From Dendrobates tinctorius (Eukaryota), in assembly GCF_039654945.1 (NCBI RefSeq), contig NW_027361688.1:930001-977164 (forward strand): DNA of 47,164 nt. The letters are read 5' to 3'. Shown piece by piece: positions 14,046 to 17,000 of this stretch. The stretch's first letter is position 1, and the number at the start of each line of letters is the position of its first letter. Below the pieces are notes generated by a model. The model was not told the origin of the DNA and did not search any database. It saw only the letters and a program-made list of their open reading frames with translations. A program made the position numbers and the translations under genes.

Positions 14046-17000
14046 CTAACGAGACAACAGAGAAAAAAAAGCTTCAGAAGTCTAAAGATGTATAGGAAAA
14101 AGCGCAAAATAAGAACTAAGGAGGCGGCAGAGAGCGGCCGAGCGAGCGAGAGGCGGCAGAGAGCGGCCGAGCGAGCGAGAGGCGGCCGAGCGAGCGAGAG
14201 GCGGCAGAGAGCGGCCGAGCGAGCGAGAGGCGGCAGAGAGCGGCCGAGCGAGCGAGAGGCGGCAGAGAGCGGCCGAGCGAGCGAGAGGCGGCAGAGAGCG
14301 GCCGAGCGAGCGAGAGGCGGCAGAGAGCGGCCGAGCGAGCGAGAGGCGGCAGAGAGCGGCCGAGCGAGCGAGAGGCGGCAGAGAGCGGCCGAGCGAGCGA
14401 GAGGCGGCAGAGAGCGGCAGCAGGCACAGAGAACCTTCAATAAGTTATTCCCGGACAAAAGCTTTAATGGAGTAGTCACTTATTTTCACTACAGAAATGC
14501 ATGGAGTGGATCATACTTACACTTACCTGGCTGCAGAATATCTGATTCTGGGAATTCATCAAAGTTGGACGTGTCATCAATGCTCTTTATCTCAATGTTA
14601 ATAGCGGCTGGTCTCTCCCTGTATCAAGAAAAGAAAAGACTCAACATGACAACGGAAAAATTGTATCTAACTATATCGAAAGCACGGACAGGATCTTATC
14701 ATGTATCTCTGTATACAGGGAGCTCCCCCTAGTGGTGACTGCAGACAGGATCTTATCATGTATCTCTGTATACAGGGAGCTCCCCCTAGTGGTGACTGCA
14801 GACAGGATCTTATCATGTATCTCTGTATACAGGGAGCTCCCCCTAGTGGTGACTGCAGACAGGATCTTATCATCTATCTCTGTATACAGGGAGCTCCCCC
14901 TAGTGGTGACTGCAGACAGGATCTTATGTATCTCTGTATACAGGGAGCTCCCCCTAATGGTGGCTGCAGACAGGATCTTATCATCTATCTCTGTATACAG
15001 GGAGCTCCCCCTAGTGGTGACTGCAGACAGGATCTTATGCATCTCTGTATACAGGGAGCTCCCCCTAGTGGTGGCTGCAGACAGGATGTCATCATGTATC
15101 TATACAGGGAACTCCCCTTAGTGGTGACTGCAGACGTCTCTCGTGTTGGATCCTCTGTACCTGATATGTCCCCAGTCCACACATTCAAAAAACGGGTGAG
15201 TTTTTATTTCCTCTACTCCAATTGCACCAATTCGGTTGTCCGCGTCGTTGCAAAACCTGTTTGGAAGAAACATAGGCTGTAATATTGGGGACAGTAAAGT
15301 CTCCATTCCTTGAATGTATTAAATATCTATCCTGGGACGGCGCCAGCAATCACGGAGGGTCCGCGTCTCCGGCTCTAACGGCGTCACACGCACCTGAGGA
15401 TTAAGTCTTTGGCCTTTTCGGATATTGGCACCTCTGGAGGGAACACGAGGGTCTCTTTCCAGGTCATCACTTTCCGATACGTCTCTTGAGGAGTTTCCGA
15501 GCAGAAGGGAGGATATCCTGCGAGAGGCGAAACACTGCGATGAGCGCGCGGGTTATTGCGACAGCGCAACATGACAGGAGGGTTCTCATCACACCCCGGC
15601 AGTGAAATATGGGGGGTCCGTACCTATCAGCATCTCGTACATAATGACTCCGAGCGACCACCAGTCACACAGCTTGTTGTATCCCGTCTGCATGAAGACC
15701 TCCGGAGCGATGTAGTCAGGGGTCCCGACTGTAGAATAGGCCTGTGCGCAAACACAAAGGACACCACACCATAACTGACAGAAACAGTGAGGGTCCGACA
15801 TCTGGGGGTCTGCTGCATCCCATCCACAGCAGCACTACAAAACCTGGGTGTCCGGGGAACAGCGACACATCCAGTAACGCGCCTATAAGATAAGGGGCAG
15901 TCCACAGCAAAGTATGACAGCGACCTACCAGCTGCCGACGATTCTTTTTCCAAGTCTCCGCTTTCCTCTTTGAGTTCATATTCTGAAAAGCTGAAAAAAA
16001 AAAAAAAAAAAGAATTTTCATCTAACTTTATACTGATTGCAGCTCAGTATATCTGATACAGAGTCTGTCTGCAGCCACCACTAGGGGGAGCTCCCTGTAT
16101 ACAGAGATATATGATGAGATTCTGTCTGCAGCTACCACTAGGGGGAGCTCCCTGTATACAGAGATACATGATAAGATCCTGTCTGCAGTCACCACTAGGG
16201 GGAGCTCCATTGTATACAGAGATACATGATAAGATCCTGTCTGCAGCCACCACTAGGGGGAGCTCCCTGTATACAGAGATATATGATGAGATTCTGTCTG
16301 CAGCTACCACTAGGGGGAGCTCCATTGTATACAGAGATACATGATAAGATCCTGTCTGCAGCCACCACTAGGGGGAGCTCCCTGTATACAGAGATACATA
16401 AGCCACTAGGGGGAGCTCCCTGTATACAGAGATACATGATAAGATCCTGTCTGCAGCCGCCACTAGGGGGAGCTCCCTGTATACAGAGATACATGATAAG
16501 ATCCTGTCTGCAGCCACCAGTAGGGGGAGCTCCTTGTATACGGAGATACATAAGCCACTAGGGGGAGCTCTCTTTATACGGAGATACATGATAAGATCCT
16601 GTCTGTAGCCACCGCTAGGGGGAGCTCACTGTATACAGAAAAACATGATAAGAACCTGTCTGCAGACACCACTAGGGGGAGTGCCCTGTATACAGAGATA
16701 CATGATAAGATCCTGTCTGCAGCCACCACTAGGGGGAGCTCCCTGTATACAGAGATACATGAGATCATGTCTGCAGCCACCACTAGGGGGAGCTCCCTGT
16801 TTACAGAGATACATGAGAAGATCCTGCATGCAGCCACCACTAGGGGGAGCTCCTGTATATGGTTTAGTATACATCACACAGTGAGCTCCCTCTACTGGTG
16901 GCTCTTGGCAGAAAGAATGCACATAGTTGCCCCAGAGCTGGGGGTCTGGAGCTGTGTATCAGTGTGTTACATCCTTGTACTTACAGAAGTCGCTGGGCGG

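What the first reader, a model, noticed from the sequence alone, without database searches (positions are those of the whole stretch)
14686..16860. Inverted copies of one 57-bp array tightly bracket STK38L exons 9-12 (circRNA, exon-skipping or dsRNA geometry)
Seen: the intron-12 array starts ~25 nt from the exon-12 donor. Its reverse complement in intron 8 ends ~70 nt from the exon-9 acceptor. The pre-mRNA could form a ~450-bp duplex, in many registers, looping out exons 9-12 (62+118+124+96 = 400 nt, including the activation segment). Established: reverse-complementary flanking intron sequences promote back-splicing and are ADAR substrates. Inference: a minisatellite-driven (rather than SINE-driven) 400-nt circSTK38L, or a frameshifted exon 8-13 skip product that lowers kinase output.
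Basis: partly seen in the sequence, partly recalled or inferred. Interest (0 to 1): 0.78.

Follow-up and report, generated by a model that had tools for sequence, protein, structure and literature searches.

The report
Inverted minisatellite arrays bracketing four exons
Two oppositely oriented arrays of one 57-base repeat flank four exons of a frog kinase gene and could pair in the RNA, but the available RNA data show only the normal linear message, so this looks like an untested by-product of a very repeat-rich genome.

Summary
Array A (14687-15135, 8 units) and array B (16060-16859, 15 units) are the same 57-bp unit in opposite orientation. They lie in introns 12 and 8 of a minus-strand NDR-kinase gene (STK38L-like). 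They sit 25 nt from the exon-12 donor and 70 nt from the exon-9 acceptor. Exons 9-12 total 400 nt, so removing them shifts the frame.

In silico the arms form about 430 base pairs and close a 931-nt loop holding the four exons. No other strong inverted repeat exists in the 47-kb window. DNA contigs confirm all four array edges.

The unit core is the terminal inverted repeat of an interspersed MITE-like element also present at 12455-12945. The family is very abundant genome-wide, and 47% of the window is tandem arrays. The tight bracketing follows from arrays filling short introns.

RNA contigs from two studies carry the ordinary linear exon 7-13 message. No back-splice, skip or editing evidence could be obtained. 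The data were contigs only, and the tool dropped joints at the exon-9 acceptor, so absence is uninformative.

Verdict: a real, well-placed inverted repeat of a textbook kind. A low-level circle is plausible and a regulatory role is unsupported. Modest interest.

The parts
14687..15135 (+). Array A: 8 units (57, 54 or 53 bp) of the 57-bp repeat, in intron 12 of the minus-strand gene. It takes up 449 of the intron's 542 nt.
   Evidence: TRF; core motif hits; unit alignment
16060..16859 (-). Array B: 15 units of the same repeat in reverse complement, in intron 8 (about 800 of 994 nt). It contains two 38-bp deleted units and internal higher-order duplications.
15929..15990 (-). Exon 9 (62 nt). Encodes the NDR-specific basic insert of the activation segment.
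   Evidence: present in the RNA contigs by record arithmetic
15624..15741 (-). Exon 10 (118 nt). Encodes the activation-loop end and the APE motif.
   Evidence: RNA contig pieces
15394..15517 (-). Exon 11 (124 nt)
   Evidence: RNA contig pieces
15161..15256 (-). Exon 12 (96 nt). Its GT donor lies 25 nt from array A.
   Evidence: RNA joint 14617/15160
16985..17087 (-). Exon 8 (103 nt, DFG motif). The upstream exon of a possible exon 8-13 skip.
14527..14618 (-). Exon 13 (92 nt). Its acceptor lies 68 nt beyond array A.
15994..16011 (-). T18 polypyrimidine tract of the exon-9 acceptor. The reads tool treats 15985-16022 as a repeat and drops joints there.
16876..16903 (+). Single copy of the family core in the opposite orientation, just outside array B. 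It looks like the other end of the inserted element and is a small within-intron pairing competitor.
12455..12945 (.). Related interspersed element with 21-nt terminal inverted repeats carrying the same core. A 40-bp array (5.6 identical copies) has grown from its right end.

Best explanation
Two minisatellites expanded separately in situ from the terminal-repeat region of an abundant MITE-like transposon family. They ended up in opposite orientation in the short introns 8 and 12 of the frog STK38L-like kinase gene. The arrangement is real in the DNA.

On the pre-mRNA the arms can zip into an imperfect duplex of about 430 bp. That duplex closes a loop of about 930 nt containing exons 9-12 and brings the exon-12 donor next to the exon-9 acceptor.

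Shown: the dominant product is still the ordinary linear mRNA.

Inferred: pairing happens only in the fraction of transcripts in which intron 8 is still unspliced when array A emerges about 925 nt later. In that fraction it yields minor by-products, namely a 400-nt exon 9-12 circle, its exon 8-13 frameshifted counterpart (an NMD target), and probably edited intron RNA. Nothing indicates a selected regulatory device. The closeness to splice sites is what any array in a 100-200-nt ancestral intron must show.
For: Geometry and splice sites.

Duplex: 427 intermolecular pairs and ddG -521 against -9 kcal/mol for shuffled arms. The MFE of the whole exon 8-13 RNA has 431 B-A pairs, 0 A-A and 85 B-B, and closes a 931-nt loop.

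It is the only strong inverted repeat in 47 kb.

Separate growth: A units mostly carry GTGAC and B units GTGGC, and B has its own 38-bp deletions and higher-order duplications.

Transposon origin: the core equals the 21-nt terminal inverted repeat of the element at 12455-12945, and an opposite-facing copy sits at 16881-16900. Small inverted copies with 29-39-nt spacers occur at other loci (table 5c). MITE-end-derived arrays are documented in frogs (PMC9659126).

Abundance: summed word depth on the arrays is 1.5e3-1.7e5 against 3-5 on unique DNA, and more than 4000 contigs were laid. Tandem arrays make up 47% of the window.

Linear mRNA: single contigs of 2187 and 2130 nt from two studies carry the canonical joints for introns 7, 9, 10, 11 and 12, and include exon 9 by record arithmetic.

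Introns without their arrays would be 93 and 194 nt, like introns 9-11 at 106-187 nt.

The repeat-pairing mechanism, and the fact that very stable pairing can also block circle formation, come from PMC5168830 and PMC5733622.
Against: No read-level RNA data were available. The claim that by-products are only minor rests on contig continuity and on priors.

The pair is unusually good: there is no competitor, and it lies 25 and 70 nt from the splice sites. A substantial circle is therefore not excluded.

Two arrays of one family only 925 bp apart may be more than uniform chance would give. No genome-wide census could be made.

Library types of the RNA runs are not on record. Poly(A) selection would hide circles.
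Confidence: 0.6

Rival explanations
1. One reading: the array pair is an effective driver of a 400-nt circular STK38L RNA, or of exon 8-13 skipping with NMD, and measurably lowers or tunes kinase output.
For: A long, uncontested reverse-complementary match lies next to both splice sites. Splice signals and the likely branch-point region are left single-stranded. The skip product would hit a stop about 10 codons into exon 13. The mechanism is well established for Alu and other repeats.
Against: Two RNA studies assemble only the full linear path, as unbroken contigs across the exon 8/9 and 12/13 junctions. The flanking introns are short, so intron 8 can be removed before array A is made. Very stable pairing can inhibit circle formation. 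The family is a genome-wide repeat, so selection need not be invoked.
Confidence: 0.12
2. The main fate of the pair is as a long intronic double-stranded RNA. It would be hyper-edited by ADAR, unwound by helicases, or diced into small RNAs, with little effect on splice choice.
For: The predicted duplex of about 430 bp is far above the length needed for promiscuous editing. Editing of such intron pairs and its antagonism to circles are documented. Family sequences are abundant in the RNA runs (table 2).
Against: The RNA contigs show no excess of T-to-C over other changes (X8: T>C 2 and A>G 4, against C>T 5 and G>A 5). This is uninformative because array positions collect contigs from thousands of loci. 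No intronic contigs of this locus were seen in the RNA runs.
Confidence: 0.15
3. The relevant level is DNA or chromatin. The unit core resembles a CTCF site, so the two blocks could act as oriented protein-binding clusters. Alternatively the 450-bp inverted arms could make exons 9-12 prone to inversion or breakage.
For: By comparison with the consensus recalled from memory, the core differs from the CTCF consensus at about one key position; an earlier scan note (s1-369564) raised the resemblance. The arms are 89-93% identical and 925 bp apart.
Against: The two blocks face away from each other and are only about 1 kb apart, which does not fit loop anchoring. No binding data exist. DNA contigs and RNA contigs show only the reference orientation of the central block. 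The central block is single-copy, with depth 3.5 like the flanks.
Confidence: 0.05
4. Assembly artefact: one array is mis-oriented or collapsed.
For: Tandem arrays are hard to assemble, and the short contigs do not see the array interiors.
Against: All four array-to-unique junctions are present in DNA contigs with 28-64 orientation-specific array letters. A related species shares one junction. The RNA contigs are colinear with the exon order.
Confidence: 0.02

Closest known systems
Inverted-repeat-flanked circular RNA loci (mouse Sry; human IRAlu loci such as ZKSCAN1, HIPK3 and POLR2A; C. elegans reverse-complementary matches)
   Same: Reverse-complementary sequences lie in the two introns flanking an exon block, close to canonical splice sites. 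Predicted across-intron pairing wins over within-intron pairing. The arm length of about 450 nt is similar to what I recall being required for Sry. The general mechanism is cited from PMC5168830.
   Different: The arms are tandem arrays of a 57-bp unit rather than single dispersed SINE copies. Pairing can therefore occur in many registers, the arms are unequal (8 against 15 units), and arm length could vary between individuals. The flanking introns are short (542 and 994 nt), whereas circle-flanking introns are usually long. No back-splice product has been shown here.
MITE-end-derived tandem repeats in frogs (Xstir from the Xmix MITE in Xenopus laevis; miDNA4 in X. tropicalis)
   Same: The repeat unit contains the terminal inverted repeat of an interspersed element. 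Arrays are dispersed at many loci and sit in gene introns (PMC9659126).
   Different: The sequence family is different and unnamed. No target-site duplication was recognised. Array A lacks an opposite end. The parent autonomous element was not identified.
Foldback-type transposons with arms built of tandem subrepeats (Drosophila FB, Tetris)
   Same: Two inverted arms are made of short tandem units around a central segment (PMC4079207 was listed but not read).
   Different: The central segment here is four conserved, single-copy exons of an ancient gene (depth equals that of the flanks). The outer ends of the two arms are in different unit phase. It is therefore two insertions, not one mobile element.

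Membership tests
Exon block flanked by intronic reverse-complementary matches (circRNA-prone locus) | Reverse-complementary stretches of at least 30-40 nt in both flanking introns | tested here: met
   Arms of 208 nt at 93% ungapped and 468 columns at 88.7% gapped; 427 intermolecular base pairs
Exon block flanked by intronic reverse-complementary matches (circRNA-prone locus) | Canonical acceptor and donor at the would-be back-splice sites, left accessible | tested here: met
   AG before exon 9 and GT after exon 12. The duplex ends 70 and 25 nt away. In the MFE the sites pair only locally.
Exon block flanked by intronic reverse-complementary matches (circRNA-prone locus) | Across-intron pairing favoured over within-intron pairing | tested here: met
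   The MFE of the 2561-nt pre-mRNA has 431 B-A pairs, 85 B-B and 0 A-A. No other strong inverted repeat occurs in the window. This is thermodynamic only; kinetics were not tested.
Exon block flanked by intronic reverse-complementary matches (circRNA-prone locus) | Back-splice junction (exon 12 to exon 9) present in RNA | tested here: inconclusive
   Contigs only. Joints at 15985-16022 were dropped by the tool, and 84 joints were not shown.
Exon block flanked by intronic reverse-complementary matches (circRNA-prone locus) | RNase R resistance or divergent-primer product | not testable with these tools
   Bench experiment
ADAR-edited long intronic dsRNA | Clustered A-to-G changes in RNA that are absent from DNA of the same animal | tested here: inconclusive
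   Array positions collect contigs from thousands of loci. There is no T>C excess and no locus-specific intron coverage.
MITE/TIR-derived minisatellite (Xstir-like) | Unit homologous to the terminus of an interspersed element with terminal inverted repeats | tested here: met
   The core is shared with the 21-nt inverted ends of the element at 12455-12945
MITE/TIR-derived minisatellite (Xstir-like) | Dispersed, multi-copy family | tested here: met
   More than 4000 DNA contigs were laid on the arrays, 759 of them only partly. Summed depth is 1e3-1e5 times that of unique DNA.
MITE/TIR-derived minisatellite (Xstir-like) | Opposite terminal repeat and target-site duplication bounding each array | tested here: inconclusive
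   Array B has an opposite-facing core at 16881-16900. Array A has none. No duplication was evident by eye.
NDR-family kinase gene (STK38/STK38L) | Exons encode the kinase catalytic loop, the activation segment and the AGC C-terminal region, and are closest to NDR kinases | tested here: met
   Exon-by-exon Pfam hits: Pkinase 1e-12 and 1e-11, Pkinase_C 5e-5. The best solved relative of exon 10 is human STK38, 6BXI, at 8e-23.
NDR-family kinase gene (STK38/STK38L) | Paralogue is STK38L rather than STK38 | not tested
This needs the joined protein model, which was left out.
Foldback transposon carrying captured exons | Whole unit (arms plus centre) present at several loci | tested here: not met
   The central block has single-copy depth (3.5), the same as the flanks at 3-5

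The most novel reading that the evidence does not exclude
A copy-number-variable minisatellite pair, rather than a SINE pair, drives a 400-nt exon 9-12 circular RNA from STK38L. The matching frameshifted skip product would then be made as well. Array length differences between individuals or species would then tune the circle-to-linear ratio and so the kinase dose. That would make it a fast-evolving, multi-register 'zipper' for back-splicing in a repeat-rich amphibian genome.
Probability: 0.12. Interest if true: 0.55.

Novelty: new member of a known kind. Interest (0 to 1): 0.3.

Why it matters
If the circle exists, this locus would be a clean natural test of how arm length and pairing register of flanking repeats set back-splicing efficiency. 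The arms are tandem arrays that probably vary in copy number, there is no competing pair in the gene, and the internal introns are tiny. It would also show that in amphibian genomes, where minisatellites fill introns, tandem repeats rather than SINEs can supply circRNA-promoting complementarity. As it stands, it is one more exon block flanked by inverted repeats, in a genome where 47% of this window is tandem arrays, and no product has been observed.

Tried and rejected
- Rfam scan of 12300-17500: no family.
- The flank motif seen at other loci of the family (a 16-mer from the loose ends) was searched in the window: absent. The wider element therefore could not be reconstructed here.
- Idea that the 25 nt between array A and the exon-12 donor, or the outer flanks, are degenerate units supplying splice signals: alignment scores are no better than shuffles (56/500 and 55/500). 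Only the inner flank of B is weakly unit-like (15/500).
- Idea of a single foldback transposon carrying the exons: rejected on single-copy depth and on the mismatched unit phase of the outer ends.
- Assembly error: rejected.
- Editing readout from contigs: not interpretable.
- Literature: no paper on minisatellite-driven circles or on amphibian STK38L circles was found. A rodent circStk38l appears only as a primer pair. An 'Xstir' substring search returned unrelated papers.
- Organism names were coded. The species name (dyeing poison frog) comes only from an earlier scan note and was not verified.
Exons were searched one by one. Exons were concatenated only inside a local script to count the reading frame and stop position, and nothing was printed.

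Full report
**What is there**

The gene lies on the minus strand. Three-frame translation and splice-site inspection give these exons, all with AG/GT:
- exon 7: 17396-17242
- exon 8: 17087-16985 (103 nt, DFG)
- exon 9: 15990-15929 (62 nt)
- exon 10: 15741-15624 (118 nt)
- exon 11: 15517-15394 (124 nt)
- exon 12: 15256-15161 (96 nt)
- exon 13: 14618-14527 (92 nt)

Searched exon by exon, the pieces hit Pkinase (1e-12, 1e-11) and Pkinase_C. The closest solved relative of exon 10 is human STK38, 6BXI, at 8e-23. It is therefore an NDR-family kinase. The STK38L-versus-STK38 assignment was not formally tested, because a joined protein model was not sent to any search tool.

**The arrays**

TRF reports a 57-bp array at 14687-15135 (8.1 copies, 92%) and its reverse complement at 16065-16859 (13.6 copies, 79%). 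The 20-nt core occurs 8 times on the plus strand in A and 15 times on the minus strand in B. The window holds 31 matches against 0.03 expected.

Inverted arms reach 208 nt at 93% without gaps, in 69 different registers. A gapped self-alignment gives 468 columns at 88.7%. All 25 longest inverted pairs in the 47-kb window are A/B. The next best unrelated pair is 193 bp at 80% and lies 17 kb apart.

- A to the exon-12 donor: 25 nt
- B to exon 9: 70 nt
- A to exon 13: 68 nt
- B to exon 8: 125 nt

Exons 9-12 sum to 400 nt, which is 1 modulo 3.

**Is it real DNA?**

In the best DNA run, one 1018-nt contig without mismatch covers 15072-16089. It reaches 64 nt into A, runs through all four exons, and reaches 30 nt into B. 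Other contigs cover 14450-14714 and 16830-17400.

The core is not palindromic, so these edges fix the orientation of both arrays. That run may be the assembly's own sample. Independently, a relative about 3% diverged (X5) has the outer junction of A (14450-14719). The RNA contigs are colinear with the exon order. An assembly artefact is very unlikely.

**Origin of the repeat**

The unit core is the 21-nt terminal inverted repeat of an interspersed element at 12455-12945. That element has grown a perfect 40-bp array from its right end.

Just outside array B, a single core faces the other way (16881-16900), as expected for the far end of an inserted element.

At other loci, contigs show two inverted cores separated by 29-39 nt. 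These are small palindromic copies, and one of them was found in both RNA runs (table 5c).

The family is extremely abundant:
- More than 4000 DNA contigs fit the arrays.
- Summed word depth on the arrays is 1.5e3-1.7e5, against 3-5 on the unique parts. The tool warns that this is not a copy number, so I take it only as an order of magnitude.

A units mostly read GTGAC where B units read GTGGC. B also has its own 38-bp deleted units and duplicated higher-order blocks. The two arrays therefore grew separately in place.

Tandem arrays seeded by MITE ends are documented in frogs: Xstir and miDNA4 (PMC9659126).

Tandem arrays make up 47% of this window. Without their arrays, introns 12 and 8 would be 93 and 194 nt, like introns 9-11 at 106-187 nt. 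The tight bracketing is therefore what any array in such an intron must show, and it is no sign of selection.

**RNA pairing**

Co-folding the two arms as RNA gives 427 intermolecular pairs and a gain of 521 kcal/mol over the separately folded arms. Shuffled arms gain 9.

The minimum-energy fold of the whole exon 8-13 pre-mRNA (2561 nt) has 431 B-A pairs, no A-A pairs and 85 B-B pairs. It closes a 931-nt loop containing exons 9-12. Splice sites and the 70-nt branch-point region lie outside the duplex.

This is thermodynamics only. Array A is transcribed about 925 nt after array B, so intron 8 may often be gone before pairing is possible (inference).

Established knowledge, from PMC5168830 and PMC5733622:
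- Complementary repeats in flanking introns promote back-splicing.
- 30-40 nt suffice.
- ADAR editing of the stems antagonises circle formation.
- Increased stem stability sometimes prevents circle formation.

**RNA evidence**

Two runs of the same organism from different studies (X8, X7) are evidently RNA. Each holds one contig (2187 and 2130 nt) with the canonical joints for introns 7, 9, 10, 11 and 12. In X8, the 63 record letters between the exon 8 and exon 10 pieces account for exon 9. The gene is therefore expressed and normally spliced.

No back-splice or exon 8-13 joint is among the 15 joints shown, but this is not evidence of absence, for four reasons:
- 84 joints were not shown.
- Contigs drop rare forms.
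- Library types are unknown.
- The tool skipped 15985-16022 (the T18 tract), which removed even the certain intron-8 joint and would equally have removed a back-splice to exon 9.

The unbroken contigs across the exon 8/9 and 12/13 junctions suggest that alternative junctions are not co-dominant (inference from how such contigs are built).

Editing cannot be read. Array positions pool thousands of loci, no locus-specific intron contigs exist in the RNA runs, and T>C shows no excess.

**Predicted products**

These were computed locally and nothing was searched. The circle would be 400 nt. An exon 8-13 join reaches a stop about 10 codons into exon 13, more than 50 nt before the last junction, so it would be an NMD candidate.

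**Verdict**

My best reading (0.6) is a chance inverted pair of transposon-derived minisatellites that causes at most minor by-products beside a normal linear mRNA. I estimate about 0.45 that a circle is detectable at all in deep ribo-depleted data, and about 0.12 that it matters for kinase output.

Known kinds cover it: exon blocks flanked by inverted repeats. The tandem-array nature of the arms, with many pairing registers and probably variable length, is the only unusual feature.

Noticed in passing
window 12455-12945: An interspersed element with exact 21-nt terminal inverted repeats (12461-12480 minus, 12920-12939 plus). A 40-bp array of 5.6 perfectly identical copies has grown from its right end. 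It lies downstream of the kinase gene's last coding exon, possibly in the 3' UTR.
   Followed up: partly
window 1-47164: About 47% of the window (22 kb) is tandem arrays from a dozen or more families. The 86-bp family occurs four times, all in the same orientation (8577-11806, 17410-17988, 18770-19181, 39254-42252). Only the 57-bp family forms an inverted pair.
   Followed up: partly
window 14718-15126 and 16076-16854: By my memory of the consensus, the unit core resembles a CTCF site apart from about one key position; an earlier scan note raised this. The two blocks face away from each other. The unit also holds nested palindromes (a 10-mer around TATA, a 10-mer around AGCT, and CTGCAG).
   Followed up: no
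table 5c (other loci; laid at 16090/15058): A small palindromic copy of the family (two inverted cores with the same 29-nt spacer) is present in RNA contigs of two independent studies. At least some family members are therefore transcribed as hairpin-capable RNA.
   Followed up: no
window 14121-14418: A GC-rich 29-bp array of about 10 copies at 97-99% identity, in intron 13 between exon 13 and the last coding exon.
   Followed up: no
window 15994-16011: An uninterrupted T18 run (minus strand) serves as the polypyrimidine tract of the exon-9 acceptor. It makes the reads tool drop all joints at this splice site.
   Followed up: yes
window 15143-16033 in run X5: The related species' run shows no contigs at all over exons 9-12 and their introns, although both flanks are covered. 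This is probably the tool's filter for conserved or human-like records and not a deletion.
   Followed up: no
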